The position numbers were made by a program, and so were the translations under genes. A model generated the notes under the pieces. That model was given only the letters and a program-made list of their open reading frames with translations. It was not told where the DNA came from and made no database searches. A stretch of DNA of 64,000 nucleotides from Amphiscolops sp. MND2022 (lineage: Eukaryota): NCBI GenBank assembly GCA_964187785.1, contig OZ076419.1, positions 14,198,001 to 14,262,000 on the forward strand, given 5' to 3'. This document shows positions 4,421 through 46,771 of the stretch, piece after piece (the stretch's first letter is position 1; every line of letters begins with the position of its first letter).

Positions 4421-4422
4421 TT

Positions 4423-7087: not shown

Positions 7088-7140
7088 ATTATAATAGGAA
7101 ATGTATTAAAATTATTAACAAGGATAAAACTGCAAGAACA

Positions 7141-8401: not shown

Positions 8402-8528
8402 ATTAGTAATTTAAAACTTTTCATTCCAAATAAAAACCAATTATGCATTGGCTGCATTGTTACAAGGTAGTTAATACAAGCATTTATTTAAATTTACTTG
8501 TGACCTTATGACATTTATTCTTTTGTAG

Positions 8529-8895
8529 ATCTGAAACTCTGTGTGCGATAGACTCAATCTTGAGAAAAACATCAATCAAAGAAATACTAGTGCAGCAAGG
8601 ATTTAATCTACTACAGCGAATTGCAGGACCTACTGGAGTTGTTGCAGATTTACCATCCTTCAATTACATACCGCTAAGAATACAAATTCCTACTGTTACC
8701 TCCAGAATTGTTCATTTGTAAGTGAGTTTGAATGATCGACATCGCAACAATTGTTATGTCAAAGAAACATCAGAAAACATGTTATCAGATTTGAGCCGCA
8801 TCAATACTAGTTCATGCAATGAATCTGAAAAATTGAAACATTTGTTACCTTGGGCAATTGTTGCATTTGCATACAATTTCGAAACGGACGTATAA
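8529..8895 (+). pseudogene. GIY-YIG endonuclease-like terminal exon, lineage A copy 1
   Basis: Acceptor TTTTGTAG ends at 8528. Frame reads SETLCAIDSILRK...IVHL*VSLND...CYVKETSENMLSDLSRINT...LPWAIVAFAYNF, aligning with the GIY-YIG segments of B, C and D. Confidence 0.65.
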
Positions 8896-10205
8896 CGGAA
8901 TAATGTTATTATTACTTAATGTTATGGCTTCAGTTACACAAATGGGTTTCCATTGCTTGACAGTATTATCGGAATAAGAAAAATTATTAACTAGAGGTAG
9001 TTAAGGTCCTGTTACGTTATGTAATTGTGTTGGAAGCTCATAGCCCAATTAGTTGACAAAAAAATTGAAATAATTGAATGTTACCAACAACAGTTACATA
9101 CTTATGATAACCTAATCTTGGATAGTTGTTCAACTATTACTATAATACAATAAATAACTAAAAGCAATCAATTAATAACACGAGGTTGTTATGATAAGAA
9201 GTGGCGATTATTTGAAAACTTTTTTGATAATTATCAGCAATTTACCTACGTATATATGGAATGAATATCGAAACTAACAAAAAATTACAAATATTGATTC
9301 AATATATGAAGAATAATTTTTCAATATTTTGTGGAAAAAAGGAATTTAATAGTTTGAAGACAATGTAAAATTTCATGAATGCAATTTATATTTGAGAAAT
9401 AGTCTCAAATACTTTTGACAAATATCCTACACAAAGAAATTTTTCATGCTGAGTTTACTTATGGCATCAATAAATGACATCATTTCATGTCTACAGCATT
9501 ATAACAAAATTTAACTTAAAATAATAGTACTTAGACACTAACAAAGTAAACGATTTATTAACATTAGTGTAATTAAGTTCTTAACCAGCAAGTGTGAAGT
9601 TAATTAAATACATATAGAAAACAACTTTGAATAATAAGTCAAAAAGTCACAAGGTAGAAATCGTTCCAAAATTTAATGTAGTTATTCATATACATTTTTT
9701 TCAATGACATCAAGTTAGATTTAACAAATCTAATAAAATGATATATTTTTCAGAATCAAAAACGGAGGAATCGGCGTCTACAGAAAGGCAACAACTAATG
9801 ATGACAAACCCCTATATTATGAAATATGTTCCTGCAGAGGTTACGTATGAATAAGTTGAAAACTAAACAATTTAGATTTAGTATTTTCAGATTCATATAT
9901 TCTTTGAATGACACTCAGTTTTTTTTCTTTTTATTATACTTACCTTACAGGAAGATAATAAGAATCAATTTGTGGAATTGTGAAAAAATACGCGATTCAA
10001 TATATAAATTTTCCAGAATTAACCAAGGATATTTGCTGTGTGATGAAAAACCAATATTACTACCCTGAATTCCAAAAAAATCCTGAGATTTAATAACGAG
10101 GCAGGTAATTTTTCAACAGAATTAATTTGATAAATTAGCTTCTGAAAAATAGAGATTTTAAATCTAAGAGGTTTTAGAACATAGACGGCTCAGTTTCAAT
10201 GTTAA

Positions 10206-11390
10206 ATGGCCTGCAGTGTTACGTCACCAGCTTGGCTTCGCGGAGAGCTGCTATATTCAATTGTGAGCATATACACCCTTTTTTGTTTATGTGTTAAAAC
10301 AAACTATGACGTTCCTGCAACAGTTGAGAAGTTGTTAACGAAATTAGGTCACAAACCAAAAAATCGAGCACTACTTCTGAGTTTGGATTTATTAGTCATC
10401 GAAGAAGTTGGAATTGTCAACAAAGAAATTACTATGTGTTATTGATTTAGTTTTCAAAAAGCTGAGAAACAACAACAGTTTGTTCAGAGGAGTGTTTATT
10501 AATGGTAATGGAGACACAAACCAATTACCAAACATAGACGGATCAGACGTTTTTGTAAGTCCTTTGGTTTTATTCTGTTTTAAAGCACACTTTCTCCATT
10601 ATTATGTTAGAATGATGGATCCAACAGGCAAGGAATTATTAGAAATGATGTCTACGAAACCTATATCACAAGAAGATATTGAAAAAAAATCGAAAAGATA
10701 ATCGATTGAAACTGCTCTTTTGTGGAATCATGGACTAACATACAAGACAAAAGAATAATGAAAGTCTTTGGCAAACGAGCTGGTGAGCAAGAAGCTATAT
10801 CATCTTACCAACAAGAAATTAAACAATCAGCAAATAGATTTTGTGAATTTGATGCAATAGATGAAATGTGTCCACATGTATCTTCAAACTGGCAGTCTGC
10901 GTCTTCTGAAGCAGTAAAAATTCTAAATAAAAAATGTCAAGAACCAAAAAAGCTAATCCTAAAGAAGCACGGTATTCTCAGACTGACGCAAAACACCACT
11001 AAGCTCTCTCAAGGAAATGTTTGTATATTAGCAGAAGTTCCAGAAGCAGATGACGTTTCGATACTAGTCTTCATTGCCCCTCAAGTTGATGCGGTTATGG
11101 ATCCAAAGTTATATGAAAATACCAATTTCCTCAGCTGGGACAAAGTTAGAATAGCAAAGTCTGCTGGTTTTTGTTTCGAAATGAACAAAATTACTGTTCG
11201 TAGGACACAATTTCCCGTTACAAATTACGTTGCATTGACAGTGCATAAACTTATGGGAGATTCTTTTTACAAACTAGCCACTCAGGTTTCTGCATGCGAA
11301 AAAAAATATTCTCTTTGGATGGCGTCCCAACTTTAAGTTATTGTCAGCCGAGTAAAAGAACTGAATAATGTTACTTTCGTTGGTCAAAAA
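10206..11390 (+). pseudogene. PIF1-type helicase, tandem copy 2 (lacks Walker A)
   Basis: ORFs 10408-10701 and 10722-11336 carry motifs III and V and LWMASQL, near-identical to the 7.2-8.4 kb copy. Confidence 0.9.
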
Positions 11391-11516
11391 TTAGTAATTT
11401 AAAACTTTTCATTCCAAATAAAAACCAATTATGCATTGGCTGCATTGTTACAAGGTAGTTAATACAAGCATTTATTTAAATTTACTTGTGACCTTATGAC
11501 ATTTATTCTTTTGTAG

Positions 11517-11883
11517 ATCTGAAACTCTGTGTGCGATAGACTCAATCTTGAGAAAAACATCAATCAAAGAAATACTAGTGCAGCAAGGATTTAATCTACT
11601 ACAGCGAATTGCAGGACCTACTGGAGTTGTTGCAGATTTACCATCCTTCAATTACATACCGCTAAGAATACAAATTCCTACTGTTACCTCCAGAATTGTT
11701 CATTTGTTAGTGAGTTTGAATGATCGACATCGCAACAATTGTTATGTCAAAGAAACATCAGAAAACATGTTATCAGATTTGAGCCGCATCAATACTAGTT
11801 CATGCAATGAATCTGAAAAATTGAAACATTTGTTACCTTGGGCAATTGTTGCATTTGCATACAATTTTGAAACGGACGTATAA
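11517..11883 (+). pseudogene. GIY-YIG endonuclease-like terminal exon, lineage A copy 2 (open)
   Basis: ORF 11548-11883: SRIVHLLVSLNDRHRNNCYVKETSENMLSDLSRINT...LLPWAIVAFAYNF. Acceptor AG at 11515-11516. Confidence 0.65.
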
Positions 11884-13193
11884 CGGAATAATGTTATTAT
11901 TACTTAATGTTATGGCTTCAGTTACACAAATGGGTTTCCATTGCTTGACAGTATTATCAGAATAAGAAAAATTAACAACTAGTGGTAGTTAAGGTCCTGT
12001 TACGTTATGTAATTGTGTTGGAAGCTCATAGCCCAATTAGTTGACAAAAAATTGAAATAATTGAATGTTACCAACAACAGTTACATACTTATGATAACCT
12101 AATCTTGGATAGTTGTTCAACTATTACTATAATACAATAAATAACTAAAAGCAATCAATTAATAACACGAGGTTGTTATGATAAGAAGTGGCGATTATTT
12201 GAAAACTTTTTTGATAATTATCAGCAATTTACCTAGGTATATATGGAATGAATATCGAAACTAACAAAAATAATTACAAATCTTGATTCAATATATGAAG
12301 AATAATTTTTTAATATTTTGTGGAAAAAAGGAATTTAATAGTTTGAAGACAATGTAAAATTTCATGAATGCAATTTATATTTGAGAATAGTCTCAAATAC
12401 TTTTGACAAATATCCTATACAAAGAAATTTTTCATGCTGAGTTTACTTATGGCATCAATAAATGACATCATTTCATGTCTACAACATTATAACAAAATTT
12501 AACTTAAAATAATAGTACTTAGACACTAACAAAGTAAACGATTTATTAACATTAGTGTTATTAAGTTCTTAACCAGCAAGTGTGAAGTTAATTAATTACA
12601 TATAGAAAACAACTTTGAATAATAATTCAAAAAGTCAAAAGGTAGAAATCGTTCCAAAATTTAATGTAGTTATTCATATACATTTTTTTCAATGACATCA
12701 AGTTAGATTTAACAAATCTAATAAAATGATATATTTTTCAGAATCAAAAACGGAGGAATCGGCGTCTACAGAAAGGCAACAACTAATGATGACAAACCCC
12801 TATATTATGAAATATGTTCCTGCAGAGGTTACGTATGAATAAGTTGAAAACTAAACAATTTAGATTTAGTATTTTCAGATTCATATATTCTTTGAATGAC
12901 ACTCAGTTTTTTTTCTTTTTATTATACTTACCTTACAGGAAGATAATAAGAATCAATTTGTGGAATTGTGAAAAAATACGCGATTCAATATATAAATTTT
13001 CCAGAATTAACCAAGGATATTTGCTGTGTGATGAAAAACCAATATTACTACCCTGAATTCCAAAAAAATCCTGAGATTTAATAACGAGGCAGGTAATTTT
13101 TCAACAGAATTAATTTGATAAATTAGCTTCTGAAAAATAGAGATTTTAAATCTAAGAGGTTTTAGAACATAGACGGCTCAGTTTCAATGTTAA

Positions 13194-14160
13194 ATGGCCT
13201 GCAGTGTTACGTCACCAGCTTGGCTTCGCGGAGAGCTGCTATATTCAATTGTGAGCATATACACCCTTTTTTGTTTATGTGTTAAAACAAACTATGACGT
13301 TCCTGCAACAGTTGAGAAGTTGTTAACGAAATTAGGTCACAAACCAAAAAATCGAGCACTACTTCTGAGTTTGGATTTATTAGTCATCGAAGAAGTTGGA
13401 ATTGTCAACAGTGAATTACTATGTGTTATTGATTAAGTTTTCAAAAAGCTGAGAAACAACAACAGCTCATTCGGAGGAGTGTTTATTAATTGTAATGGAG
13501 ACACAAACCAAATACCAACAATAGACGGATCAGACGTTTTTGTAAGTCCTTTTGTTTCATTCTGTTTTTAAGCACACTTTCTCCAACATAATGTTAGAAT
13601 GATGGATCCAACAGCCAAGGAATTATTAGAAATGATGTCTATGAAACCTATACCAGAAAAAAATATTGAAAAAATCGAAAAGATAATCGACCGAAACTGC
13701 TCTTTTGTGGATCCATGGACTAACATACAAGACAAACGAATAATGAAAGTCTTTGGCAAACGAGCTGCTGAGCAAGGAGCTATATCATCTTACCAACAAA
13801 AAGTTAAACAATCAGCAAAAAGATTTTGTGAATTTGATGCAATAGATGAAATGTGTCCACATTCATCTTCAAACTGGCAGTCTGCGTCTTCTGAAGCAGT
13901 AAAAATTCTAAATACAGAATATCAAGAACCAAAAAAGCTAATCCTAAAGAAGCACTGTATTCTCCGACTGACGCAAAACACCAGTAAGCTGGCTCAAGGA
14001 ATTGTTTGTATATTATCAGAAGTTCCGGAAGCAGATGATGTTTCTATACTAGTCTCCATTGCCCCTCATGTTGATGCGGTTATGAATCCAAAGCGTTATG
14101 AAAAAAAACGATTTCCTTAGCTGGGACAAAGTCAGAATTACAAAGTCTGCTGGTTTTATA
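13194..14160 (+). pseudogene. PIF1-type helicase fragment, copy 4
   Basis: ORF 13599-14120. Truncated after SAGF at the same breakpoint as the 4.9-5.8 kb copy. Confidence 0.85.
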
Positions 14161-27011: not shown

Positions 27012-28829
27012 TACTTTACTGTAGTGAAATGTAGTATCTAAATTAATAATATTATAAACTATTATAAACTATATTGAGACATTCTATAAATTACAATAGT
27101 ATCTTATAAGAAAAACAAATTTCATATTGTCATAAAAAACGTACAAACTGTAATAGTAAAAACAACAAATCCTAATAAATCATAATTATAATGTATTTTA
27201 CTATAATATACCATACTATGAGATAAATTATTATACTGTAATTCTTTTACTATTGATTTATCATATCACTCTAGAATATACTTTAGTATATACTAACTAT
27301 ATAAAACTATACTTCAATAATGTACATCAAAATTAAAAATTATTTATTCATGAAATTATACTTTAGTACACTATAATTTTGTATTTTATAATGTTTTACA
27401 TTATATTATATTAAAATAGACTATACTATATTGTTCTGTTCTAAACTAGATTTATAAAAATTTGTAGAATAAAAAAATATGTTTCATTTTAATGTAAAAT
27501 ATGTTGTACTTAGCTATATTATACATTTCTACCGTATACTATATGTTATACGGTGTAATACCGAACCGATCCTTTCGGTGACAAACGTCAATCAAACTCA
27601 GATCTTTCTTTGAACTTTTTTTAGAACAAATGAGATTTTTGTTCATACATATTTGTAAACATAGTGCTAAATCTTTCGTACTAAATATATATCATTTGTG
27701 TTACCAATCAGGACAGAAAGAAGATCGCTTTGACTTTGCTTTTGCGTTTAAAGATACTTTTAACAAAATCCACATTGTTTTCTTATCTAACCAAGAAATA
27801 GAACACTATATACTAGAAAATACTATTTAATGCTATAGTATACTATTCAATGCTATTATTTGCATCACTATATCTTAAATTACACAATACTAAACTATGT
27901 TATTCTACTATGGAAGAATGATTTAAGCATTTTGATTTCTTCATGAAGTGAGTTTCTTGAAGCAACATTGTCAGTTGTAACAAGTTTTTGCACTGAAGTT
28001 TATCATGTCGAAAACAGAAAGATATAAAATTGGATGATTTCCAAATAACATCAGTCGTAGTTTAGTTGTTAATCAAAATCTAACTTCTATGTGAAAAGAA
28101 TTATTGATGAAAAAAGAAAATACAATAAGGATCATGTGTGATAATCTCATTAGCATTTTCTAAGTATCATTTCGAGGGACAACAAAAAAATAAGTAAAAT
28201 AAAGGTTACAAACAATTAGGCTTTTAAATTGGGTTTTTGAGAACCATGGAATTTTTTCAAATTAGAATAACCATGAAATTATTCATTTCTTGTAAATTCT
28301 ATTGTAAAAAAAGGTTGCTTGAACTATTCACAAGGTTAAACAGAATGCGTGTGTGAACAAAACAACGATAATTATAGGTAACATCCGCAAACGATGCTAC
28401 TTCGTATTAAAGTTGTAGTCTTCTTTTTTTGGGACGTCAATAATAACAGATACTTTGTTAAAAATTGTACATTAAAAAATAAAAAGAAGAACATATCGAA
28501 CATATCGAACATATATTAGAAAAAAACGTTCCAATTTCGGATTCCAATATCGATAGTACCTACTCTCTCAACGATCACATTCGTAGGCAATTCAATCTAA
28601 AATATATGTCAAATAATCACAAATCAAAGAAAAATACCACGATATTCGTGAACTGAAATCATACGTTAGGAGTGCATAAAATTCAATAGGGTTTAATATT
28701 TCATACCTCAACGCCACATACCTCATATCAACGCCCACCGTCTGTGGGCATGCCGATGCATACCTTTTGACTACCTATACCAATTACATATCCAACGACG
28801 CCCGCACTTTCCGGGCTAGGTACTCAAAG

Positions 28830-29685
28830 GCTTTGGTAAGGGTCACAGTGAATCTGGAAGCTGAGCAACTGTCTCAAGGTCAGGTTGGTGTAGTTCACGA
28901 GGTTCCCACTGGTGACTCGGTCACAATCTACGTCCCAGATAGCAGTGGTGGGGAAGTTGGGAAAGCAGACTCTCTCAAAGCAGACCGGCTTCGTTCAGCC
29001 TTTCAAGAAGAACTCAGTGCGAAGGATACAGTTACCGCTCATGCACTTTGTTGCCATGACAACGCACAAACTCATTGGTGACACACTTGAAAAGCTGGCG
29101 ACGTCCATTTCCGCAACCGACAGTAGCTACGCTTTGTGGATGACGTCTCAAGTTCTTGTAATTGTCAGTCGTGTCAAACAATTGAAAAACCTTACTTTTG
29201 TTGGTGACAAAAACGCGACTTTAAGTGCCATCGAATCCATTTTTGAAAAGAAAGACTTGAAGAGGAACGTTTCTTCAATTTGCTAGACAAAATAAAAAAA
29301 CAACTCAAGGTGCAATTCCAGCGTTCAGCCAATCAACATTTCGAAATTATCTTACGTACCTTTTAACAAAAACATCCCAAGCACTCCTAATGGCTTCGTA
29401 TATTTTTTGATTAGTCTGAACCCGACTTCGCCCGAAATTTTTTAGGTAGGAGAAACTGAGCGCGCGCTGTTAACGCGGTTGTCGGAACACAACTGCGGCA
29501 ACGGTTCAGATTTCACGAGAACACCCCACCGTTTGTGTGGGGCAGTCGCTGCTTTTATCTGCAATTTTTCATCACGTTTTTCGCGCCGGGACTTCGAACA
29601 AGAATTACATCGAGAAATGCGTGTTCGTCATAACAATTTGAAAAATTTAAAAAGACATGCTATCTCTTTTCCAGGAAAAAGTTAA
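28830..29685 (+). pseudogene. Lineage B: helicase C-terminus followed without an intron by the best-preserved GIY-YIG domain
   Basis: QLPLMHFVAMTTHKLIGDT and QVLVIVSRVKQL, then NGFVYFLISLNPTSPEIF*VGETERALLTRLSEHNCGNGSDFTRTPHRL..AVAAFICNF...RRDFE. TAG at 29443-29445 sits at the Tyr position. Confidence 0.85.
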
Positions 29686-29755
29686 CGAAAAACTGTAATT
29701 TTCATTTTTGTGTTTGCGGTGAAATGCAGTCGACATAAAAATTTAAAAATACTTT

Positions 29756-29942
29756 GGTGGAATCGACGATGAGCGTGGTTCCAGGTTTATTATATTTAGC
29801 CTAATTTGCTGGGATCGACGATAAGCGTGGTTCCAGTTTTTTTAAACATTGATTTAATTCGGTGGAATCGACGATAAGCGCCGTTCTAGTTTTTTTCAAA
29901 TTTGATTTAATTTGGTGGAATCGACGATAAGCGTGGTTCCAG
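29756..29942. repeat. Minisatellite, 4 copies with 52-53 bp period
   Basis: Core GGTGGAATCGACGATAAGCGTGGTTCCAG at 29756, 29808, 29861 and 29914. Confidence 0.9.
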
Positions 29943-31838
29943 GTAATATTTCCTTTAGAAATACCAGCAGTGATGTAGTTAAAGAAGAAAAGGATGAAGA
30001 ACGATGTGACGGACAGATGATGACGATCTAGAAGAAAGATTAAAAGTGTAAAAGCTTGTGTACTCCTTCCAATCTTATACACAACTTTAAAAAAACATCA
30101 AAACAAAACATATAACCAGTGTGGCAGCACGTGTACTCTTTGAGCTTACCACGCTGACACACTCTACCTAAATAAAAATCGTAAAATCCCAAAAACTGAA
30201 ATTTTATACCAAAACCAGACTTTCCCAAAACCGACTTTTTCTACTTCGACTTTTTGACTAAAAGACGTTAAGACTGAGACGTGACTTTTTTAAAACCGAA
30301 CCGTTCTTTTTCCTCACATAAAGAGAATGAGTGGAGTTGATCATTGAGACGTTTTTGGCTTCAACCAAAGTAGTGTTCATGATAGATCGTCCACAGGAGG
30401 CAGAAAAGATTTGGGAATTGATTCTAATAATCCTCTTTTGTTTCTTGTGCTTCACGTTTTTTGAAAGGTTGTAGGTTTAGGACAGGCTGTAGTGATTAAG
30501 TTGAACAATTTCACATGATTGGACATGTTTCCTGCATATCACTGGGAGCCCTAACTGATAGTTCTCGTTTTGTAGATAAAAATGAACAGTTCAAATCTTG
30601 TAATAGTTGGCGCCAGTACCCTTTTCTATAGCAAACACCATCTGGTTGCCTGCAACTGCGAAACAACAGAATGCCTCCGAAACGAATCTCTTCTACAAAC
30701 GAATCTCTACTACAAACATATTCCAAGGTCAAGTTTGAAACTCATTGCTCGGACAGGAGGTGGGTTTCAACACAGAAGAAATTCATATAAGTCTGGTCAA
30801 TAAATCGTTACTTTTCCTGAAATTCATTCCTTCATCTACCACCGCTTTGTCAGTTTAAGCGCTTTAGCTTAAACTACCGGGAGCCTTCAGAGGTCGTTCG
30901 TGGTGCGGGCCTTCTGATTTCGTACACAGTAAAACCGTGTGCGATTTCAGTAAAACGAGAAAACCAACCCAGGTCGTTAAAGGTGCGGGCCTACTATTCC
31001 GTGAGGGGTAGTGAAACCAGAAAACCGGTTTTTGATGTCATGATCTAAAATACATATCCGTAATTTTTAATGTTTATCCATTTTGAAGTTTAACCTTTAA
31101 ATTAAGGACTGACCAAGCGCCCGTGTAGGCCTGACACGATTTTGGGCAGCGCGTTTCCTGAAGCCGGTGAGATAGGTAACTTTAACGTATTTTAATACTC
31201 TGTGTGTGAAGGTTGGGTTTTCAGGCTCACGTTTAGTTTTATGTTCTTAGGATTAGCTTTCTTCACAAATAAGTTTCTTGGGATTAGGTTCATTAAGTTA
31301 TCTTGTATTTTTTTTCATCAGAGTCAGCAACGACGAAAAAAAGAGAGTAGATTGACGAACCTTTTTTTAAAGTTTAATTAGTCACTATTTATTTTTCATA
31401 GATTGATTATTCATTTCATTTATTTCATTTCTTAATCTATTGATGATTATATTCATGTTAATTGAAACCTTCATAACCGAGTCTTTAATCAATCCATTAC
31501 ACATTTTTGCAATTATCATATTACTTTCAGCATGATTCACATGCGGCTTTATAATGTTTCATTCAATTTTAACTGTCGTTTTTCTCACTTTTTCCATTTG
31601 CCTGTAAACTTTGTCCTCGGCATGAGAAAAACCAGGCCTCCATCGCCTCAATTTTTTTCTGCTTTTGTTGTCGAAAAACATACTTCAATTTTTTTTCAAT
31701 TGTCTTTAAATCGGAAAATAACATTTGTGCCTTATTCTAAATTTCTCTTCAGTTACTATTTTTTTTACTCCTTATGCTATTAAACTATTTTTGTAAGCTC
31801 GTTGTATTCCAAAGCTATGTATTTTTCAGACCTTCGGA

Positions 31839-32406: not shown

Positions 32407-32834
32407 TCTTATTGTCCTTTGCTTTTTACTTCTGGTCATTGTTTGAACTGATTGCTCGTTTTAAAAAGCTGTTTGTTTCGCCTTGTATACTGTCTACTTG
32501 CATTTGAGTTGAATTGAATTGTTTCTTTGTATATATTTCTTTTCTTATTTTTTTGAATCTAAACATACCACTTGTTCATGAATTTATAGTGTAGCCTAAC
32601 TTTATCCTAACCTTTATAGTGGTCTTCGGATTTTTCCTTCTACTCATGAAATTAAACATCTTGAAAGGTTCGGTAAATTTCGAATTACATCGAGAAATGC
32701 GTGTTCGTCATAACAATTTGAAAAATTTAAAAGACATGCTATCTCTTTTCCAGGAAAAAGTTAACGAAAAACTGCAATCTTCATTTTTGTGTTTGCGGTG
32801 AAATGCAGTCGACATAAAAATTTAAAAATACTTT

Positions 32835-33020
32835 GGTGGAATCGACGATGAGCGTGGTTCCAGGTTTATTAAATTTAGCCTAATTTGCTGGAATCGACGA
32901 TAAGCGTGGTTCCATTTTTTTTAAACATTGATTTAATTCGGTGGAATCGACGATAAGCGCCGTTCTAGTTTTTTCAAATTTGATTTAATTTGGTGGAATC
33001 GACGATAAGCGTGGTTCCAG
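32835..33020. repeat. Second copy of the 52-bp minisatellite
   Basis: Same four cores, inside duplicated unit 2. Confidence 0.9.
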
Positions 33021-34901
33021 GTAATATTTCCTTTAGAAATACCAGCAGTGATGTAGTTAAAGAAGAAAAGGATGAAGAACGATGTGACGGACAGATGATG
33101 ACGATCTAGAAGAAAGATTAAAAGTGTAAAAGCTTGTGTACTCCTTCCAATCTTATACACAACTTTAAAAAAACATCAAAACAAAACATACAACCAGTGT
33201 GGCAGCACGTGTACTCTTTGAGCTTACCACGCTGACACACTCTACCTAAATAAAAATCGTAAAATCCCAAAAACTGAAATTTTATACCAAAACCAGACTT
33301 TCCCAAAACCGACTTTTTCTACTTCGACTTTTTGACTAAAAGACGTTAAGACTGAGACTTGACTTTTTTTAAAACCGAACCGTTCTTTTTCCTCACATAA
33401 AGAGAATGAGTGGAGTTGATCATTGAGACGTTTTTGGCTTCAACCAAAGTAGTGTTCATGATAGATCGTCCACAGGAGGCAGAAAAGATTTGGGAATTGA
33501 TTCTAATAATCCTCTTTTGTTTCTTGTGCTTCACGTTTTTTGAAAGGTTGTAGGTTTAGGACAGGCTGTAGTGATTAAGTTGAACAATTTCACATGATTG
33601 GACATGTTTCCTGCATATCACTGGGAGCCCTAACTGATAGTTCTCGTTTTGTAGATAAAAATGAACAGTTCAAATCTTGTAATAGTTGGCGCCAGTACCC
33701 TTTTCTATAGCAAACACCATCTGGTTGCCTGCAACTGCGAAACAACAGAATGCCTCCGAAACGAATCTCTTACAAACATATCCCAAGGTCAAGTTTGAAA
33801 CTCATTGCTCGGACAGGAGGTGGGTTTCAACACAGAAGAAATTCATATAAGTCTGGTCAATAAATCGTTACTTTTCCTGAATTTCATTCCTTCATCTACT
33901 ACCACCGCTTTGTCAATTTAAGCGCTTTAGCTTGAACTACCGGGAGCCTTCAGAGGTCGTTCGTGGTGCGGGCCTTCTGATTTCGTACACAGTAAAACCG
34001 TGTGCGATTTCAGTAAAACGAGAAAACCACCCCAGGTCGTTAAAGGTGCGGGCCTACTATTCCGTGAGGGGTAGTGAAACCAGAAAACCGGTTTTTGATG
34101 TCATGATCTAAAATACATATCCGTAATTTTTAATGTTTATCCATTTTGAAGTTTAACCTTTAAATTAAGGACTGACCAAGCTCCCGTGTAGGCCTGACAC
34201 GATTTTGGGCAGCGCGTTTCCTGAAGCCGGTGAGATAGGTAACTTTAACGTATTTTAATACTCTGTGTGTGAAGGTTGGGTTTTTAGGCTCACGTTTAGT
34301 TTTATGTTCTTAGGATTAGCTTTCTTCACAAATAAGTTTCTTGGGATTAGGTTCATTGAGTTATCTTGTATTTTTTTTCATCAGAGTCAGCAAAGACGAA
34401 GAAAAAGAGAGTAGACTGACGAAATTTTTTTAAAGTTGAATTATTCACTATTTATTTTTCATAGATTGATTATTCATTTCATTTATTTCATTTCTTAATC
34501 TATTGATGATTATATTCATGTTAATTGAAACCTTCATAACCGAGTCTTTAATCAATCCATTACACATTTTTGCAATTATCATATTACTTTCAGCATGATT
34601 CACATAAGGCTTTATATTTCTTCATTCATTTTTAACTGTCGTTTTTCTCACTTTTTCCATTTGCCTGTAAACTTTGTCCTCGGCATGAGAAAAACCAGGC
34701 CTCCATCGCCTCAATTTTTTTCTGCTTTTGTTGTCGAAAAACATACTTCAATTTTTTTTCAATTGTCTTTAAATCGGAAAATAACATTTGTGCCTTATTC
34801 TAAATTTCTCTTCAGTTACTATTTTTTTTACTCCTTATGCTATTAAACTATTTTTGTAAGCTCGTTGTATTCCAAAGCTATGTATTTTTCAGACCTTCGG
34901 A

Positions 34902-35467: not shown

Positions 35468-36797
35468 TCTTATTGTCCTTTGCTTTTCACTTCTGGTCAT
35501 TGTTTGAACTGATCGCTTGTTTTAAAAAGCTGTTTGTTTGGCCTTGTATACTGTCTACTTGCATTTGAGTTGAATTGAGTTGTTTCTTTGTATATATTTC
35601 TTTTCTTATTTTTTTGAATCTAAACATACCACGTGTTCATGAATTGATAGTGTAGCCTAACTTTATCCTAACCTTTATAGTGGTCTTCGGATTTTTCCAT
35701 CTTCTCATCAAATTAAACATCTTGAAAGGTTCGGTAAAATTCAAGTGATATTTCATGACATGTATTCGTTTAATTGTCTTTGATTTTCATCACTGATCGA
35801 CGGAAAGCGTGGTCAGTGATTAGGATTTTTAAACAAAATAAGGTAGAAGTGTCATCAGTGTTCGAAGGAAAGCGTGGGTGGTGATTAGGTGAAAATTCGT
35901 TTTACATTAAAAAGCAGAGAATGAGGTGCCTTTATCTTTTTGCGATGTCTAACACAACGGCGTTTTTTAAGATTTGATCTGTTTGAATTGAGCCATGCCA
36001 CGCGGTGGAGACCGAGGACATTCTTGAACTTCATTAACCACTGATTAACCTCTAAACCAACACCCGACTGACGACGACTTCTCCAATCACGTGAGTAACT
36101 TTCCTTTTTAACACTTTCCCGCCTTCTTGACTCTCTCCGTTCAACCGTGCACGTCTGGGTAACGGGGGGGGGGGTGTCACCAATCAATTATAGCGAGGGG
36201 GGTAGGGCCCAATACCCGAGCATTTGACACTAAAAGTTTAGATCAAGTGACGACCTCTCCAGAAGTGATTTTGGATTTGAACCGTAGGAATTTAATGGTA
36301 TTTTGGCCCCCGCTAGAGATTTGGATTATAAGCGCCCCTTTATAATCCTTATTGATTTTTGTTGAAATAAATTTGTTGGTTCAAAAAACACAATATATAT
36401 ATATAGCTTTTATTACTCATGCCAGGTATTAGCGATAATAGGGTTTTTTGATATTATATGGTGGAATTAGTGGTTTGAAAATTGATATATATTAATTTAA
36501 AACATATTTAAAAATAAAAATACATCATTTTTTCCATTAAATGTATACCTTTTTAAATATTTATATGTAATAGGTTGCATTAAAAATTATTATAATATTT
36601 CAAAAATATTTCATAAAAAAATTGCAGCGTCCATTCGAGACCAGATTTAAATTCGAGCAGAGTATTATTTTTTTCATCATGTAAATTTATAAAACGTTGT
36701 GAATTGCAAGACATAATCATTTTGTGTTTCAGTTTCTCATTTCTCAGCGCTCAATGTGAAGGATGTGGTTCCAGATTTGAACTTTTTCAGGAAAAAA

Positions 36798-39169: not shown

Positions 39170-42100
39170 ATGCGAAAAAAAATTGCGCAGATCTGCCAAT
39201 GGGCAATTCTGTGGGACTAACATTCAGACATCTGCGGATACAGATACTTTCGTCACAGAAACACAAGCATCAACACTTATCGACAATGTTATCGACAATC
39301 ACTTTGATGAAGCGGCACACATAGACACTATTGACTGTGACTTTGAAACAGTTAATCAAATTGAAGACAACACTTCCAATGATGTTACTTTGCCTGCAGA
39401 ATTATCAAATACAGTTACTGACAACAACATCAAATTGGTCGACAGACATTATCGGTAAAACAATTAAACGCATGGTTTCTCCAGACTTTGCTATATTGTT
39501 ATGACCAGCTTCTACAATACTTACAAGTCTCAGTATCAACCATGTTTGTGAAAAATGTTGCAGAGAATCAACTGAACATTATCCTTTACAATTTCAAAAT
39601 GTTTCGACTGCAACTTTGAGATCACGACAATTTGGACGACAGGTTAAATCAAAGCCAACAGCCATGTTGTGTAACGAATGTTTGTTGTATAGCTCTAAAC
39701 GATTATGGAAATATGCATGGCCATCTGTTTTATTCACTTTGTTTTTCGATGATTCAAAGTTTTCCTGCAACGTTCCTTACTTTTTCCAGTTATTTCCTAG
39801 AACCTTAACGGAATCATGGCGAAAGTTTGCATTCAATTATGGATTTAGTTACACGGTTTCGTTATTTCTTTTTTAAGATTAAAGTGTAATTAAATCGTCA
39901 ATGATTAAAGCGCACAAAGGCTGCAATTTGAAAACGAAGTTCTGTCAATATTCATTTCCCTTTATCAAATGTCCGGTTGGTTGTTGTGTAATGATATCAG
40001 AAGTAGGGAAAATTTCTCTTGTGCATTTATTGAACTTACTCTTTCCTAGTTTTTAGCATTTTGGAGGTAACAAAATTATCTGCAAGGAATGAAACAAGAT
40101 TGGTTACATAGTACCCTCCATTTAGAAACTTATTTATGTTCTCCTTGTTTATGTATTGACGAAAACGGATTATCGATTGTTACTTGTTACTTACATAACT
40201 ATAATCATAATAAACGGTACATACACATGGCTACCTCACCGTTGGGTAATTTGACACATCCCCATTTTGATAGATTGGCTCCTTTAGCAACAAAGATTAG
40301 AGGTTATGTTCCATCCAAGAGAGGCGAGTTTACAAATGGATTCACAACTTCTACCAGCATAGGACGAGAGTGTGGTATTAGTAGTCTCCGATTGACTGAT
40401 ACAAGGAATTTCAATGTGAAAAGTGAGAATTTGTTACCATCGATTGAGCCTTTGACTTATCAAAATCGTCAAGACATTCGGACTGTAACGAATTTGTTAT
40501 TCAATGATTCCTCCATAAATCAAGATGTTATAGATTACAGAATGACAAGCAAGGCATATTACCAAGTGAATTGTTACATAATTTTACTGCTACAGCAAAT
40601 CATATGACAATGTTTTCTATGCTGTCAGTAAAAAATATTTTAATGAAAACGAAAATTTATTCAGAAGTATTCCTTGTTCTTTACTTATTTGCCATCAAAA
40701 CGACAAAAGAGGTACTGAACCTATTCTCCCAACTCAGAAAAATTTCCAAGACAAACTTTCCGTTTACATAATCACTACGTGGTTTGTCAATTTTGGTTCA
40801 ACGAGCTGTTTGGTTTCATACTTCTAACAAATGAACGCTTCAAAAGTGATACAATTGACAATTTGAACACAATAAGCAGAAATATGAGTGTCAAAAAAAC
40901 AAATTGCGAAAAAAGGGGACTTAGAAAGACAATTGTGTGAAGGCTTTGAAATTTACTCTTTAAATTTGAACAAGTTTAATCTTCTAGCACAATTATTACA
41001 GACTTTGGCAAATTGTGACCTTTTATACTGTCCCTCGCGTCAACGTATAGACGAATATCAGTTACAACACTTGAACAATCCCAATGGGAGAGTTAAAACT
41101 GTTACAATACTAACATAAGAAGATATTTTACTACGCATTGCAATGTTCCCAGACAATTTATATTTAGATGGAAACGAGGTTCAATTGGTGCACGTATTTT
41201 CATCTATCACTGGTTTTTGAATGTTACGTTACGGTGATTTATTTGATGAGTGGTGGTGCTTTGACTCAAAAAATAATTTACTGGAACAGATAAAACAAAT
41301 TGTCGTGGAGTGTTGAGAAGAAGTTGGGAAGTTTTACTGTATATTACAAAATACACAGATCTTATTACATATGGAGTTTCATCATTGTTTGAATCCGGTC
41401 GAGATAAAGTTTCATGTGGTAGTCACAAGGTTTTCCTGTCAACAGATTTGAATGATACTAGTTTCAAATGTTCAACGACTGGTTGCAACAGAAAATCGTC
41501 TTTCCGATGTCCAAAAAAGATTGTGATATTAGTATCTTTAGAACACATCTCAATTTATTCGAAAACAATAATCAAACTGTATTCCTTACATCGGACAATG
41601 ATTTAATTACAAGTAATTATAAGGACAGCTTACAGTTGTGTCGACTTGTTGAATGATATGAATCAGACTTTGGTTTTCCACCAGAATTGATACTCATTGA
41701 AGAAACTGGCTATTTCAATTGTAGTTCAGTAGATAGCGAAACCACATCCAATGTTCCCAGAGTTGAGACTTGCTCTAATGCCGATACTATTCCCTTTCAT
41801 TTGTTTTTCAATCAAGGTATGCAGTTGTTTCGACGTATCCGCAAAGCAACAAATGTATGCAAACTAGTTCAAAGACTTTTTCAAAAGTTAGCAGCATCAC
41901 AACCACAGCACACTGCTTCTTTAATACAACCAGAATCACTGCTTTGTCCCTCGTTATATATCAATCAAAATGATGATGGGCCATTCGGAGGAGCAATACC
42001 TTGCTTTCTGCATGGGGATTGTGTTGCCAACGGTAAATTGGGTTACGCCAGTTTTTATGACCACGTTTTTAGTAGAATAGACAATCTCGAGCTAACAGTT

Positions 42101-45100
42101 AGTGGAAACAAAGTATTTATACTACCTTGCTGATGCTTTTTTAAATAACTTGCTTGAAACCATGTCTTGTCATTATTTCCAACGTGGTATTCAAAACATA
42201 CATATTAATAGAGAAAAAATTAATGAATCAGTTATTAAAGCCAACTTTTTATCTGTGACGAATTCGAAAGAAATGGCACGAGCAATGGCGTACAAATGCT
42301 CAACAGTTTTCTTTACATTCACGTTAAACTTGAGAAAACATCCAGGTCCTGCTGCTTTGATGAAAACTATTGACAATCTCTTCCCAGATAAAAATTCTGA
42401 AGAACACAAACCTGTCATGCAAACGTTCGTGCCTGTTTTTATGAGAATATGGAATTTCACTGCGCAATTGATTTTGGAGTATTTGAGTAATTCTTCAGAA
42501 CAAATACTTGGTGAAATTGAAGATTACTGGGGAAGAGTAGAACTCCAAAACTATAGTACTATAGTGGCGATCCACCCCATTTCCACTTTCTACTTTGGTT
42601 GAAAGACACAGTCGCAGTTATTCAACAGAAAATAGCTTCAAAAAGGAAACATCTTGCATCAGCGTTTAAAACATATTTGAATCTGTCTTATGTCTGATCC
42701 AAAACCAAGACGACCTCGATGAGATATACCAGTTATGTTTGCGTATTCATACTCATGACTGTGCTAAAGCTTCAAACAGATGTAGAATTAAAAGAGATCA
42801 TCAAGGCAATGCGATATGTAGAATTCCACCGTATCAGCAGTCAAATGTGTATACAATATATATAAAATATTACAATTCCTTACAAAAAAGAAACTTTCCA
42901 ACTACTTGAAGAGCTTGGCTGAGCTAAATCGTTCGATGAATTCAGTTATACCTTGGACAGTTCATTAGCTGCCCAAAAATAGTCTTAACCCGCAGACAAA
43001 GGCTGTCATTTAATGCCAACATGTCCTGGACTATTTGCTATCACCAAATCCAGTACAAATGTTTTATTGATTTCCAAAATATTTAGCTTACGCTATCTGA
43101 ACAAATATGCAGCCGGAAAAGAAAAACATTTGCATGCTTCTGTAGAAACAGGACAACCAAATCAGTCTTGGAAAATTATTGAAGGAAATATCAACAATAC
43201 AAAACTTACAAGCTCGAAGTTACATCAAGAAGCTGAACTGGAAAAAAGAAGGACAAGAAAACAAAATCATGCTGCTACTATATCCCAAACTGAACAAATT
43301 TGGTGGGCATTAAAGTCACCATGTATTAATTCGTCGTTCGATTTTATTCATGTGCCATCAATAGTTATGGAAAGACGTGGTGGCGTTTTGAAGAATTTCA
43401 AACAAAATTTGAATGTTATAGAAAAGTACATGACAACCCGGGAAGATTTAAACTTACCACAAGACAGAATATTTACTTCGAATCAGAAATTTATCATTTA
43501 TGATGCTTTCACATCAAGTTATTGCATGGACAAAGTAACAATTTTTTCGTTGAGACCACCAGAACTTCTTTGTGTGTATACAATGGAGTCCTATTTCAAT
43601 TTTTTCGTAAGAGAAGAAACAGTTAAATCAATTGTTTTGTTGAACAAGTTACTGACAGCAAACCCTCACCATTGTATTGATGGATAAAATCATATAGTGA
43701 GGATACGACTATCGGCAATTAAAGAGTTGTATCAATGGTTAACAAACGTTCAGAGAAATGAAAGCATAAAAACTTATTAATCTCTTGTCGACTTTCAATT
43801 CCTCAAATTACGAAAATACATATCTATCACAACAAAAAGGTACAACACGAAAAGCCATAGTAGTTTTTTCGAATGTATACCAAAGCAACCTCTCAATTTC
43901 CTACTGCACTTGCTGTATACAATGGGTCACGTCGAGACGGAATTAGATATTTTCAACAGTACTTTGTTATTGGATGCTTTCAAGAAATCGAAAATACTTC
44001 CTTCTGATACCACAACTAAATCAGACGCTTATAACTTGATAAAACGATATCTGTTCGAGCAAATGAGTTACATTCCTGGAGGAGATATTTCACTTTCATC
44101 TCGTTTATCACATGCCTTCTCCTCAATGGTCTCACTAGTTACCGAATTTTCACTACCTTACTTCAACTTTCCTATCGTTTTAATGTCCAAATTAACAGAA
44201 CAAGTTAAAAGTTCAGTTGAAATGTACCTCAGAGAAACAAGCTAAATTATACGAACGACTGAATCCTTTAAACCTAAAAAACAAACCCTCTGAAATACCA
44301 CAAGAAATTATTACTAGTTGGAGTCCTGAAATGATACAATTGGAAGTTCAATCAAATGAGTCTTTCATGGAGCAATCTAGTGTGCTCCAAAAGATGTTAC
44401 TATTTATAAACGCCAGATTGGTTTCAAAATTTGAAAATTGTAGAAAAAATTTCGTCATGCTTGGGAGACCGGTCTCAGGGAAGAGCCATGTAACATCAGT
44501 GATTACACTTTATGCTATGCTAAGCGGATTAAAATGTTACGTCACTAGTTTAGCTTCCAAACGGTCTTCGAACTTTAACTGTGATCATTTCCATCGATTA
44601 TTTTGCCTAGAAGTTATTGCAAGCATTAGTCCTACAGATCATGCTCATATTGCTCTGAAAAGAATCTTGAAGTATCCCAGAAAACACACATTTCTTTTTA
44701 TCATTAGATTCGTTAGTGTTAGAAGATATTGGTTTGATAAATGCAGAATTGTTGGATACTATTGACATTATTCTACAATTACTACATGACAATAATTTAA
44801 CATTTGGAGGCATTACTTTGATTTGTAATGGAGATACCAATCAACTTCCTGCAATAACAGGAACAGACACGTTTCTGAGTTCGTCTTTGTTTTTCAACTT
44901 TCAATGTTATTTTCTTGACTACGATGTTCGTATGATCGACTCTGAAGGACAACTTGTTTTGGATTCAATGTCTAAAAACTCAGTTAGCCCGGAAGCAATT
45001 GAAAAAATTATCGAAATCATTCAACGACGGTGCACTTTCGTTGACTCATGGGATGATATTGATGATGTCAAAATCTTGAATGTTTTTGGAAAGAAAAAAG

Positions 45101-46313
45101 CTGAGAGAGAAGCTATTGCTTATCACAAAGAGAGAGTAGGTGGGACGTCAAAAAGCACCGTAACAATCGAAGCAGAAGACGAAATGTGTATGTCGAAAAG
45201 TTCAGCGTGGCTACAGGCAGCGGAAAAAGTTAAAAACTTTTTAGACATTAAAATGCGAGAACCACGATTATTGTTATTACATGAACACTGTTTACTAAGA
45301 AATACAATCAATTTAAAAAATATTTCTCAGGGTCAAGTTTGCATATTAGCAGAAATGCCTTCAGAAACTGACAATTTCATTTCTGTTTATGTACCACCTG
45401 ACGCCAATTCACTTTCAGATGCAAAATTGTGGACTGAAAGTTTATTTATCAATTGGCCTGTCAACATATTATACAAATCACTGGGATATGTATTGTACAA
45501 AAATTGGACTGTCAGAAGAAAACAAATACCAGCAGTTACCAATGCAGCAATGACTTGTCATAAACTCATGGGAGATACTTTTCTGAAAACTGCTAGTAAA
45601 ATATCTGTTACTGATGTGGATGGATTGTTATATGTTATTGTCAGCAGAGTTAAACAATTATCAAATGTCATCTTCGTTGGTCCTCGGTTAGTAAATCATT
45701 ATATTTTCAAAAAGTAAAAAAAATTCAACGCAATAGTCAGTTTAAGATAAAGTTTGAAAATTTTGAAAAATTCAATTGAAAATGTTCTCAAGTATTGAAA
45801 ATAAAATCATGTTTTCAGAGACGAAACACTTACAGCAATGAGGGTTATTTTGGCAAAAACGAGTCCCCATGAAATTGCATTACAAAAACGATTCGAATTA
45901 TTGAGAGAAGCAAATGAGAAAGAGGAAGCTGCCGAAATCGTTTTGCCAGAAGTATTGATGTCTCCAATTATTTGTACTATTCCTCAAGTAGAATTTGGAT
46001 TTGTTTATATACTAGTCAGCAAATCGCAGTGTCCCAGGATTGTAGAGTTTGTAGGCAATACTGAAAGCAACCTTTTACATTGTCCAAGAAACAAAATTCA
46101 GATGTTAATTTCCTCACTACATCTTTACCTTTGAGACCTTGGTGCTTAATCGCTTTCATTTATAACTTTAATTCTGATAATGAAAGAGATTGTTGCGAGT
46201 CATACTTGAAAAACTGTATACTTGCTGAGTATTTTAAAAATAATGAAATTTACCAAGATGTGGAGCTTTGCTTAAAATGTTTCGATGAATCAAATCTACG
46301 ATATTATAAATGA
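39170..46313 (+). pseudogene. Lineage C RepHel-GIY-YIG polyprotein gene (about 7 kb, disrupted)
   Basis: STVFFTFTLN (motif 1), YWGRVELQ..PPHFHFLLWL (HUH, ~42575), RYLNKYAAGK (Y2), GRPVSGKS (Walker A), LVLEDIG, FGGITLICNGDTNQLP, TCHKLMGDT, YVIVSRV. Intron 45687-45818, then GFVYILVS..FVGNTE..RPWCLIAF. Confidence 0.9.
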
Positions 46314-46771
46314 GCTCATGAAATTATAAATAAATTAAGATGATTCAAACTTCTTTTCAATATTTTAATTGTTGTCAAGGAATCAACAATTTTGGAACTG
46401 TCAATTCTTTCAGTTTTTCATTTAAAGCTATATACAAATCAAAGAAGGAAATATGAGATTTCAAAATGAATTTCGAGCTTTCACGAAAGTTTCTTGCGTG
46501 AAAGCGAGAACCCTTAGTTGAATTTTTAAATTATTCTTGTTTTAGTTGGAAAAGTCATTGAAATTTAATTCAAAGTTTTTTTAGAGAATAAGTATATTAA
46601 ATGGTCAGTGAAAGTATAAAATTTCCTTTGATAATGCAAAAGAAGTTATTTTTTATTCTTTTTAATTGTGTTTTTACTTTTTCGAACCTATAAACTTTAG
46701 AAGCAAAACATATTAGAAATAATGTTTGTTTTGAATTCCAGATTCTTTGAAAAACTTCAAAACTGAAAAAA

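What the first reader, a model, noticed from the sequence alone, without database searches (positions are those of the whole stretch)
29341..29685. Helitron/Helentron-like family whose RepHel is followed by a GIY-YIG endonuclease domain in all lineages present
Seen in sequence: after helicase motif VI, B reads NGFVYFLISLNPTSPEIF*VGETERALLTRLSEHNCGNGSDFTR..AAF..RRDFE. C (45819-46313) reads GFVYILVS..FVGNTE..RPWCLIAF..CE, D2 (60360-60739) GYVY..RPWSLAAF, and A (8529-8895, 11517-11883) IVHLLVS..CYVKET..LPWAIVAF. Established knowledge: this is the GIY..YIG..R..HN.G..RPW.L...E pattern of SLX1/UPF0213-type GIY-YIG nucleases, whereas the endonuclease usually described on Helentrons is APE-type, and GIY-YIG in transposons is best known from Penelope-like elements. 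Inference: a possibly undescribed rolling-circle TE clade with a structure-specific nuclease for resolving or integrating intermediates. Only B keeps the catalytic-position Arg.
Basis: partly seen in the sequence, partly recalled or inferred. Interest (0 to 1): 0.9.

Follow-up and report, generated by a model that had tools for sequence, protein, structure and literature searches.

The report
Helitron-like transposase with SLX1-type nuclease
The window holds decayed copies of a rolling-circle (Helitron-like) transposon family whose giant transposase ends in an SLX1-type GIY-YIG nuclease domain; intact copies of this barely described architecture sit elsewhere in the genome, and relatives occur in a crustacean, in Perkinsus and probably in diatoms.

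Summary
They are the 3' remnant of a RepHel gene, with a TAG at the YIG tyrosine codon and a late frameshift.

The same genome has at least 23 open frames of 2231-2853 aa that carry Helitron_like_N, PIF1 and a C-terminal GIY-YIG domain. Pfam scores for GIY-YIG reach 28-38 bits against a cut-off of 22.6.

A profile of the domain hits SLX1 (E 2.9e-9). An AlphaFold model matches SLX1 and At-HIGLE with Foldseek probability 1.0. Between sublineages the domain shows dN/dS of about 0.04-0.09.

Copies A, C and D carry the homologous domain behind a phase-2 intron that arose within this subclade. Their relatives have lost catalytic residues.

On RepHel trees the GIY-YIG clade is one branch (99/98), apart from canonical Helitron, APE-Helentron and DUF6570 references. 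No member scanned has APE or DUF6570.

Relatives occur in Perkinsus olseni, Hyalella azteca and many metagenome contigs; an automatic ESM Atlas label points to diatoms.

Prior art found is one sentence on a moss HLE2 family with a "captured" GIY-YIG. The scan's first readers noted the same architecture on two other pieces of this genome.

The nuclease's role is inferred, not shown. Termini, target site and transcription remain unresolved.

The parts
28782..29340 (+). Copy B: remnant of the helicase C-terminus, equivalent to residues about 2052-2240 of the intact 2371-aa ORF. The copy is 5'-truncated.
   Evidence: tblastn with L021 ORF: 28821-28958 is 100% identical and 28969-29652 is 87% identical, E=4e-136.
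29341..29685 (+). Copy B: decayed GIY-YIG domain, which is the finding itself. TAG at 29443-29445 replaces the YIG Tyr codon, PW is changed to CG, and a frameshift lies near 29650.
   Evidence: translation. Pfam GIY-YIG E=0.0015, sub-threshold; the intact paralogue is above threshold.
29686..30770 (+). Copy B: 3' non-coding region of the element, with short tandem repeats at 29750-29945.
   Evidence: blastn to the region downstream of the intact copy (E1 8860-10188), 83-87% identity.
32682..33830 (+). Tandem duplicate (period about 3.06 kb) of B's ORF tail and 3' region.
   Evidence: residues 2327-2371 of the query, 79-93% identity. E1 8700-10188.
36019..36160 (+). Block shared with the distal 3' region of B-type elements. 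It ends in ...CACGT CTGG, next to 5'-region-like sequence.
1817..8402 (+). Copy A: rearranged, frameshifted RepHel fragments (Rep, helicase, and a second partial Rep-helicase).
   Evidence: tblastn with the A-like intact ORF from L030, 37-65% identity, E down to 1e-139.
8521..9031 (+). Copy A: GIY-YIG-like exon lacking catalytic residues. The intron donor upstream is no longer GT.
   Evidence: (E=9e-45 to L030 exon 2).
10196..12019 (+). Second partial A copy: helicase C-terminus 10196-11390, intron remnant, and GIY-like exon 11509-12019.
   Evidence: One search reports 99% identity to the 8.5-kb copy.
13184..14160 (+). Third partial A copy, helicase only.
39451..45686 (+). Copy C: near full-length RepHel broken by frameshifts. 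Helitron_like_N lies at 42096-42599 and PIF1 at 44671-45714.
   Evidence: Pfam; tblastn to L029, 42-65% identity.
45687..45818 (+). Copy C: 132-nt phase-2 GT...AG intron between the helicase and the GIY-YIG exon.
   Evidence: Same position as the 67-nt intron of L029 and the introns of L030 and L031.
45819..46331 (+). Copy C: GIY-YIG exon, with a frameshift and a stop inside.
   Evidence: and (E=7e-36 to L029 exon 2).
52837..60078 (+). Copy D: near full-length RepHel with frameshifts and an internal duplication around 56829-57600.
60237..60730 (+). Copy D: GIY-YIG-like exon, frameshifted and without catalytic residues. The intron donor upstream is mutated.

Best explanation
SHOWN. The stretch is the decayed C-terminal nuclease domain of a Helitron-like (RepHel) rolling-circle transposon. 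In intact copies one ORF of about 2370-2850 aa encodes four parts in order:
- a Cys/His-rich N-terminal region;
- an HUH / two-tyrosine Rep nuclease;
- a PIF1-type SF1B helicase;
- after a linker of about 50 aa, an SLX1/URI-type GIY-YIG nuclease of about 90 aa, followed by a tail of about 45 aa.

The domain belongs to this RepHel clade. It diverges together with the helicase, it is under strong purifying selection, and its catalytic Tyr, Tyr/Gly, Arg, His-Asn and Glu are kept in most members.

INFERRED (about 40% likely). HUH nucleases cut only single-stranded DNA. The GIY-YIG module may supply the cut in duplex or branched DNA, at the donor end or the target, that lets the 5'-to-3' helicase load and expose single strand for Rep. 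That would be the role usually proposed for the unrelated AP endonuclease of Helentrons.

One subclade (window copies A, C and D and their relatives) gained a phase-2 intron in front of the domain and lost catalytic residues. Those elements probably no longer use it as a nuclease.
For: Architecture:
- Pfam on the intact ORF of L021 gives Helitron_like_N 2e-10, PIF1 3e-11 and GIY-YIG 2e-6 at 28.4 bits against a cut-off of 22.6.
- L027 gives GIY-YIG 1.6e-9 at 38.4 bits.
- 18 of 21 long relatives match GIY-YIG.
- The HUH histidines are nearly invariant and the two Tyr invariant across the 21.

Nuclease type:
- The domain profile hits SLX1 4xlg at E=2.9e-9, At-HIGLE 7wme at 1.8e-8 and UPF0213 1ywl at 1.6e-4.
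- The AlphaFold2 model has pLDDT 82.7.
- Foldseek's top hits are 7wme, 6sei and 7cq3 with probability 1.0 and TM 0.6-0.67.

Function retained:
- dN/dS of the GIY core is 0.04-0.09 between sublineages, like the helicase at 0.05-0.11.
- Catalytic residues are kept in about 16 of 21.
- Helicase and GIY-YIG distances correlate, Mantel r=0.50, with 0 of 5000 permutations as high.

Transposon behaviour:
- The own genome gives 90 matches, at least 23 in open frames of 2231-2853 aa, plus many broken copies.
- Head-to-tail arrays flank the autonomous copies.

Distinct clade:
- The GIY clade is one side of a branch with support 99/98.
Against: - No biochemical or transposition data exist, so the nicking role rests on analogy alone.
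- SLX1 proper needs SLX4 and a RING finger. Both are absent here, so activity and substrate could differ.
- Several lineages keep the domain without catalytic residues (L030, L031, P0014, P0123, Hyalella). This shows that transposase-like ORFs can persist without an active GIY-YIG.
- dS is saturated (above 1.4), so the dN/dS values are approximate.
- Termini and target site were not resolved, so nothing ties the nuclease to a particular cut site.
- No RNA data were available.
Confidence: 0.6

Rival explanations
1. The GIY-YIG acts late rather than early. As a structure-specific nuclease like SLX1, it would cut the flap, fork or junction left after Rep-mediated strand transfer or at termination of rolling-circle synthesis. 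It would resolve intermediates rather than open duplex DNA.
For: The closest sequence and fold relatives are SLX1 enzymes that cut 5' flaps and branched DNA. The domain sits directly behind a 5'-to-3' helicase that would create such structures.
Against: There is no RING finger or SLX4-binding part. No data on substrates exist. This reading cannot be separated from the nicking model by sequence alone.
Confidence: 0.25
2. The domain is kept mainly for a non-catalytic role, such as DNA binding, folding or regulation of the helicase. Nuclease chemistry would be dispensable.
For: A whole subclade (L029, L030, L031, P0014, P0123) and the Hyalella protein keep a well-aligned domain without Arg, Tyr, His or Glu. 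Some sit behind long open RepHel frames.
Against: About 16 of 21 deep-branching members keep every catalytic residue. Whether the lineages with dead domains still transpose is unknown. The window copies of those lineages are all pseudogenes.
Confidence: 0.1
3. The GIY-YIG is a passenger: a host gene fragment picked up by Helitron-style gene capture, as the HELIANO paper words it for the moss family, with no role in transposition.
For: Helitron-like elements often capture host gene fragments. PMC11417382 calls the moss domain 'captured'.
Against: The domain is fused in frame at the same position across proteins only 23-38% identical. It is under purifying selection, diverges together with the helicase, and marks a single clade on the RepHel tree.
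Confidence: 0.03
4. These are host helicase-nuclease genes, not transposons.
For: NCBI annotates relatives as ordinary 'uncharacterized protein' or 'ATP-dependent DNA helicase' genes.
Against: The family has dozens of dispersed and clustered copies at every stage of decay, plus tandem head-to-tail arrays. The HUH/Y2 Rep domain is typical of Helitron transposases.
Confidence: 0.02

Closest known systems
HelenSM92, an HLE2 family of the moss Sphagnum magellanicum (HELIANO paper, PMC11417382)
   Same: A Helitron-like element reported to carry RepHel plus a GIY-YIG domain.
   Different: Here the domain is fused in frame, conserved across a deep clade of animal, alveolate and probably diatom elements, and of the SLX1 type. 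GIY-YIG is not among the recurrent accessory domains that paper names in its text.
Helentrons (HLE2 subgroup b) with AP endonuclease
   Same: The RepHel transposase is extended by an accessory endonuclease. OTU or UCH-type cysteine protease domains occur in some members (P0013, P0235). The elements form tandem head-to-tail arrays.
   Different: The endonuclease is a GIY-YIG, not an Exo_endo_phos (APE) domain. No member scanned has APE or the HLE2 marker DUF6570. The APE-bearing reference P0245 lies outside the clade.
Canonical Helitrons (HLE1; Helraiser, PDB 7lcc)
   Same: An HUH/Y2 Rep is followed by a PIF1-like helicase in one protein. The Helraiser helicase matches the family profile at E=7e-18.
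   Different: The Rep part of Helraiser is not matched by the profile. The HLE1 references sit on a long separate branch with support 100/100. The proteins here are about 800-1300 aa longer and end in a nuclease.
SLX1 / At-HIGLE / UPF0213 (URI-type GIY-YIG nucleases)
   Same: Same motif set (GxxY, YxG, R, HN, RPW, E) and same fold. These are the best sequence and structure matches.
   Different: The domain is a module at the end of a transposase. It has no C-terminal RING/PHD finger and no sign of an SLX4 partner. It is related at the level of the domain family, not as an orthologue.
Penelope-like retroelements
   Same: A eukaryotic mobile element whose main enzyme is fused to a C-terminal GIY-YIG nuclease, thought to nick the target.
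   Different: Penelope couples the nuclease to a reverse transcriptase, while this family couples it to an HUH Rep plus helicase. No RT domain is present in any ORF here.

Membership tests
Helitron-like elements (RepHel rolling-circle transposons, broad sense) | Rep domain with an HUH motif and a two-tyrosine motif | tested here: met
   Pfam Helitron_like_N 2e-10. The HxH motif (for example HYHILFW, PHIHALIW) and RYLxKYAAG, with both Tyr invariant in 21 proteins.
Helitron-like elements (RepHel rolling-circle transposons, broad sense) | PIF1-type SF1B helicase downstream of Rep in the same protein | tested here: met
   Pfam PIF1 3e-11. PDB Pif1 helicases and the Helraiser helicase are matched.
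Helitron-like elements (RepHel rolling-circle transposons, broad sense) | Multicopy and dispersed, with decayed and non-autonomous derivatives | tested here: met
   90 matches in the own genome, at least 23 in long open frames. Pseudogene copies A-D in the window. Units of about 1.28 kb sharing the 5' and 3' regions form arrays.
Helitron-like elements (RepHel rolling-circle transposons, broad sense) | Defined left and right termini, no target-site duplication, specific dinucleotide target | tested here: inconclusive
   Every boundary examined was a junction between tandem units (...CACGT CTAG or CTGG, then GTGCC...). No array edge or empty site was available, and no significant terminal hairpin was found.
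Helentron / HLE2 | AP (Exo_endo_phos) endonuclease domain, which defines Helentron | tested here: not met
   Absent from all full-length ORFs scanned.
Helentron / HLE2 | DUF6570 domain upstream of Rep, the HLE2 marker according to PMC11417382 | tested here: not met
   No hit in 21 proteins at E<=0.001 and none in the N-terminal 993 aa of L021. The marker is present in the HLE2 reference P0246.
Helentron / HLE2 | RepHel groups phylogenetically with HLE2 | tested here: inconclusive
   The GIY clade plus P0235 is separated from all references at 99/98. Its position relative to HLE1 and to the two HLE2 references is unresolved at 57/0. Only 5 outgroup sequences were used, all on long branches.
Canonical Helitron (HLE1) | Rep and helicase cluster with HLE1 such as Helraiser | tested here: not met
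   The Helraiser Rep is not detected by the family profile. HLE1 references lie on a separate branch of length about 1.8-2.0 with support 100/100.
Canonical Helitron (HLE1) | 5'-TC ... CTRR-3' ends with a 3' hairpin | tested here: inconclusive
   CTAG or CTGG occurs at the unit junctions, but it cannot be assigned to an end and no hairpin stands out (z-scores +0.7 to +1.6).
GIY-YIG superfamily, SLX1/URI (UPF0213) branch | GIY and YIG motifs plus catalytic Arg, His/Asn and Glu | tested here: met
   Met in intact B-type copies and about 16 of 21 relatives. Not met in the window's own copies, which have a stop at the YIG Tyr in B and eroded residues in A, C and D.
GIY-YIG superfamily, SLX1/URI (UPF0213) branch | Profile score above the curated threshold | tested here: met
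   28.4 and 38.4 bits against a cut-off of 22.6 for L021 and L027. The window piece alone scores 19.3 bits, below the cut-off.
GIY-YIG superfamily, SLX1/URI (UPF0213) branch | GIY-YIG alpha/beta fold closest to SLX1 | tested here: met
   The model has pLDDT 82.7. The top 11 Foldseek hits in the PDB are SLX1 or HIGLE at probability 1.0.
SLX1 proper (orthologue) | C-terminal RING/PHD zinc finger and SLX4 partnership | tested here: not met
   The ORF ends about 45 aa after the domain. No zinc-finger family was hit. Partnership with SLX4 is not testable here.
Penelope-like elements | Reverse transcriptase fused upstream of the GIY-YIG | tested here: not met
   No RT domain in any of the ORFs. The only RT in the window belongs to a separate BEL/Pao element on the other strand.

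The most novel reading that the evidence does not exclude
RepHel-GIY-YIG elements may be a third deep lineage of eukaryotic rolling-circle transposons, beside canonical Helitrons and HLE2/Helentrons. The lineage would span animals, alveolates and diatoms and still be active in this genome. Its SLX1-type nuclease would do the same job as the unrelated AP endonuclease of Helentrons. That would make an accessory duplex-DNA nuclease a repeatedly acquired part of eukaryotic HUH transposition.
Probability: 0.3. Interest if true: 0.8.

Novelty: new variant of a known kind. Interest (0 to 1): 0.62.

Why it matters
How Helitron-like transposases gain access to single-stranded DNA in chromatin is unsettled, and so is what the accessory endonuclease of Helentrons does. 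A second, unrelated nuclease fused at the same end of RepHel gives an independent handle on that question.

The family offers useful material. It has many naturally intact copies, and it has natural variants whose nuclease residues have eroded.

It also matters for annotation. These proteins of 2300-2850 aa are currently labelled 'hypothetical', 'ATP-dependent DNA helicase' or 'GIY-YIG superfamily endonuclease'. Pfam-based transposon classifiers see only weak Helitron_like_N matches (7 of 21), so the clade is easily missed or misfiled.

Tried and rejected
- RNA evidence for expression and for splicing of the helicase/GIY-YIG intron. No RNA run was on record, and the four runs that were laid are DNA contigs without a joint.
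- Exact termini and target site. Comparing copies gave only internal variant boundaries (a point where two 3' variants diverge) and junctions between tandem units. The ends do not fold better than shuffled sequence.
- Homology between B's 5' region and the conserved motif of about 130 bp upstream of C and D. None was convincing.
- DUF6570 or APE as HLE2/Helentron markers. Both are absent.
- Matching Rep to Helraiser. Only the helicase aligns.
- Chance resemblance, a Penelope origin and host-gene readings were considered and rejected (see the rival explanations).
- Literature. Of 32 papers holding both 'Helitron' and 'GIY-YIG', only the HELIANO paper and its preprint link the two. Two reviews that were checked (PMC6431247, PMC5718144) list RPA, OTU and AP-EN for Helitrons and give GIY-YIG only for Penelope-like elements.
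- Supplementary tables of HELIANO are not held.
- The host species was not identified.

Full report
**What is at the coordinates**

It starts with a GFVY motif. A TAG at 29443-29445 sits where intact relatives have the Tyr of FYVG. The reading continues VGETERALLTRLSEHNCGNGSDFTR, then AAF, then RRDFE.

The copy is a remnant in four respects:
- It begins only at the equivalent of residue 2052 of the intact protein.
- It has the in-frame stop described above.
- PW is replaced by CG.
- A frameshift near 29650 cuts the tail.

Pfam on the stop-free piece alone gives GIY-YIG at E=0.0015, below the curated cut-off. The quoted strings for copies A, C and D2 are also present at the stated places.

**Intact copies**

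Searching the whole genome with the 79-aa piece gave 90 matches. At least 23 of them lie inside open frames of 2231-2853 aa.

One such frame (L021, 2371 aa) carries three domains:

| Domain | Residues | E-value | Score |
|---|---|---|---|
| Helitron_like_N | 1031-1129 | 2e-10 | |
| PIF1 | from 1776 | 3e-11 | |
| GIY-YIG | 2257-2333 | 2e-6 | 28.4 bits, cut-off 22.6 |

A more distant 2853-aa frame (L027) scores 38.4 bits for GIY-YIG. The nuclease is therefore part of the transposase reading frame, not a neighbouring gene.

Across 21 long relatives, the HUH histidines are nearly invariant (at least 90% of rows). The two Rep tyrosines and the helicase Walker motifs are invariant.

**Kind of nuclease**

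- A profile of eleven domain sequences hits SLX1 of Candida glabrata (E=2.9e-9), the plant SLX1 homologue At-HIGLE (1.8e-8), yeast SLX1 and a bacterial UPF0213 protein.
- An AlphaFold2 model of the last 137 residues has mean pLDDT 82.7.
- Foldseek's best eleven PDB matches for that model are all SLX1 or HIGLE at probability 1.0. UvrC and I-TevI rank far behind.
- The family consensus reads GFVYLLVS, YIGET, RL..HN.G, RPWAL.AF, FE..W.
- There is no RING finger. The protein ends about 45 residues after the domain.

**Is the domain used?**

- Between B sublineages the domain core has dN of 0.10-0.25 against saturated dS. This gives dN/dS of roughly 0.04-0.09, the same range as the adjacent helicase.
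- All catalytic positions are kept in about 16 of 21 deep relatives.
- Pairwise distances of helicase and nuclease correlate (Mantel r=0.50; none of 5000 permutations as high).
- This argues for one old acquisition followed by joint descent, not repeated capture of a passenger.

**The window's other copies**

tblastn maps copy A at 1817-9031, with partial repeats at 10196-12019 and 13184-14160. Copy C lies at 39451-46331 and copy D at 52837-60730.

In A, C and D the nuclease part lies in a separate exon behind a phase-2 intron. The intron sits directly after the codons for F-V-G-x-K/R:
- It is GT...AG in window C (45687-45818).
- It is also GT...AG in intact relatives: L029, where it is 67 nt and removing it restores the frame exactly, and L030 and L031.
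- The donor is mutated in window A and D.

On a RepHel tree the intron-bearing lineages form one clade (support 100). That clade is sister to two intron-less proteins with dead domains. Both together are sister to lineage B, nested well inside the family. With the reference sequences as outgroup, the intron is therefore a later gain, not a relic of the fusion.

In this same subclade the canonical Arg is missing (L029), or Tyr, Gly, Arg, His and Glu are all gone (L030, L031, P0014, P0123).

**Spread and relationships**

- An exhaustive profile search of 1.84 billion cluster representatives found 1081 proteins at E<=0.001 and 337 at E<=1e-10. Among the 150 best listed, 27 are over 1000 aa, and in 26 of these the domain lies at or near the C-terminus.
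- Named relatives include partial proteins of Perkinsus olseni and an 'uncharacterized protein' of the amphipod Hyalella azteca. The Hyalella domain is recognisable but catalytically eroded.
- An ESM Atlas cluster with PIF1 plus GIY-YIG is labelled mostly diatom.
- Most close hits come from one ENA assembly that is probably this same species. They are not independent evidence.
- Some members add cysteine-protease domains: OTU (P0013), Ulp1/Peptidase_C48 (P0171) and UCH (P0235).
- None of the 21 scanned has the AP endonuclease of Helentrons or DUF6570.
- With three canonical-Helitron-like proteins, one APE-bearing protein and one UCH/DUF6570-bearing protein as references, the GIY-YIG family is a single branch (99/98) with P0235 as sister. 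The order among the deep groups is unresolved.
- The Helraiser Rep is not detected by the family profile, although its helicase is.

**What is known**

Reviews list RPA, OTU and AP endonuclease as Helitron/Helentron accessories and give GIY-YIG only for Penelope-like elements. [quoted passage not shown] It does not name the domain in its text among the 20 recurrent ones.

I therefore rate this a new variant of a known kind. It is not categorically new, and its novelty depends on a Repbase/Dfam check that I could not make.

First readers of this scan noted the same architecture on two other pieces of this genome.

**Mechanism**

The following is shown: the domain composition, the fusion, the selection and the clade.

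The following is inferred. Rep can cut only single strands. The SLX1-type module may provide a cut in duplex or branched DNA that lets the helicase load, or alternatively it may resolve branched intermediates. Sequence cannot separate the two.

Lineages with eroded residues show that the domain can persist without chemistry.

**Limits**

- Element ends and target site were not resolved. Every boundary found was a junction in head-to-tail arrays.
- No RNA data were available.

Noticed in passing
window 18317-24688 (-): An uninterrupted 2123-aa ORF of a BEL/Pao LTR retrotransposon lies between copies A and B. Pfam hits are Peptidase_A17 2e-40, DUF1759, RVT_1, Integrase_H2C2 and DUF5641.
   Followed up: partly
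window 29620-36160: The tail and 3' region of copy B are repeated in tandem with a period of about 3.06 kb. The repeats include two equal-length 137-aa ORFs (31839-32252 and 34902-35315) with no Pfam match.
   Followed up: partly
window 38175-38330 and 51562-51715: A non-coding block of about 130 bp upstream of RepHel in copies C and D is about 80% identical over the 240-nt stretches aligned. The encoded proteins are each only about 45-50% identical to a common relative. The block contains a short GGGCA...TGCCC stem followed by a T run. B-type elements have no clear counterpart.
   Followed up: partly
L069, L070, L021+L033 (G000:C1:73.48 Mb): Autonomous B-type copies are embedded in head-to-tail arrays of units of about 1.28 kb. 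Each unit is made of the element's 5' part (about 790 bp) and 3' part (about 490 bp), so the units look like non-autonomous derivatives. On one contig two full RepHel genes follow each other 13.4 kb apart.
   Followed up: partly
G000:C1:73.4-76.5 Mb: At least 14 of the long open RepHel-GIY-YIG frames cluster in about 3 Mb of one chromosome.
   Followed up: no
L029:8121-8187; L030; L031; window 45687-45818: A phase-2 spliceosomal-type intron sits at the identical codon position between the helicase and the nuclease exon. It is confined to one subclade and is inferred to be a gain. Splicing is not confirmed by RNA.
   Followed up: yes
P0013, P0171 (L067), P0235: Members of the clade carry different ubiquitin/SUMO-type cysteine protease domains. 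OTU is at the N-terminus of P0013, Peptidase_C48 follows the GIY-YIG in P0171, and UCH is in P0235.
   Followed up: no
window 60458-60736 and G000:C11:14288268-14288546: Copy D's nuclease exon has a 100% identical twin 29.8 kb downstream, outside the window. This suggests a recent segmental duplication that includes D.
   Followed up: no
window 10196-14160: The partial A copies (helicase plus nuclease exon) recur with a period of about 2.99 kb at 7.2, 10.2 and 13.2 kb, so they are tandem duplicates of an already broken element.
   Followed up: no
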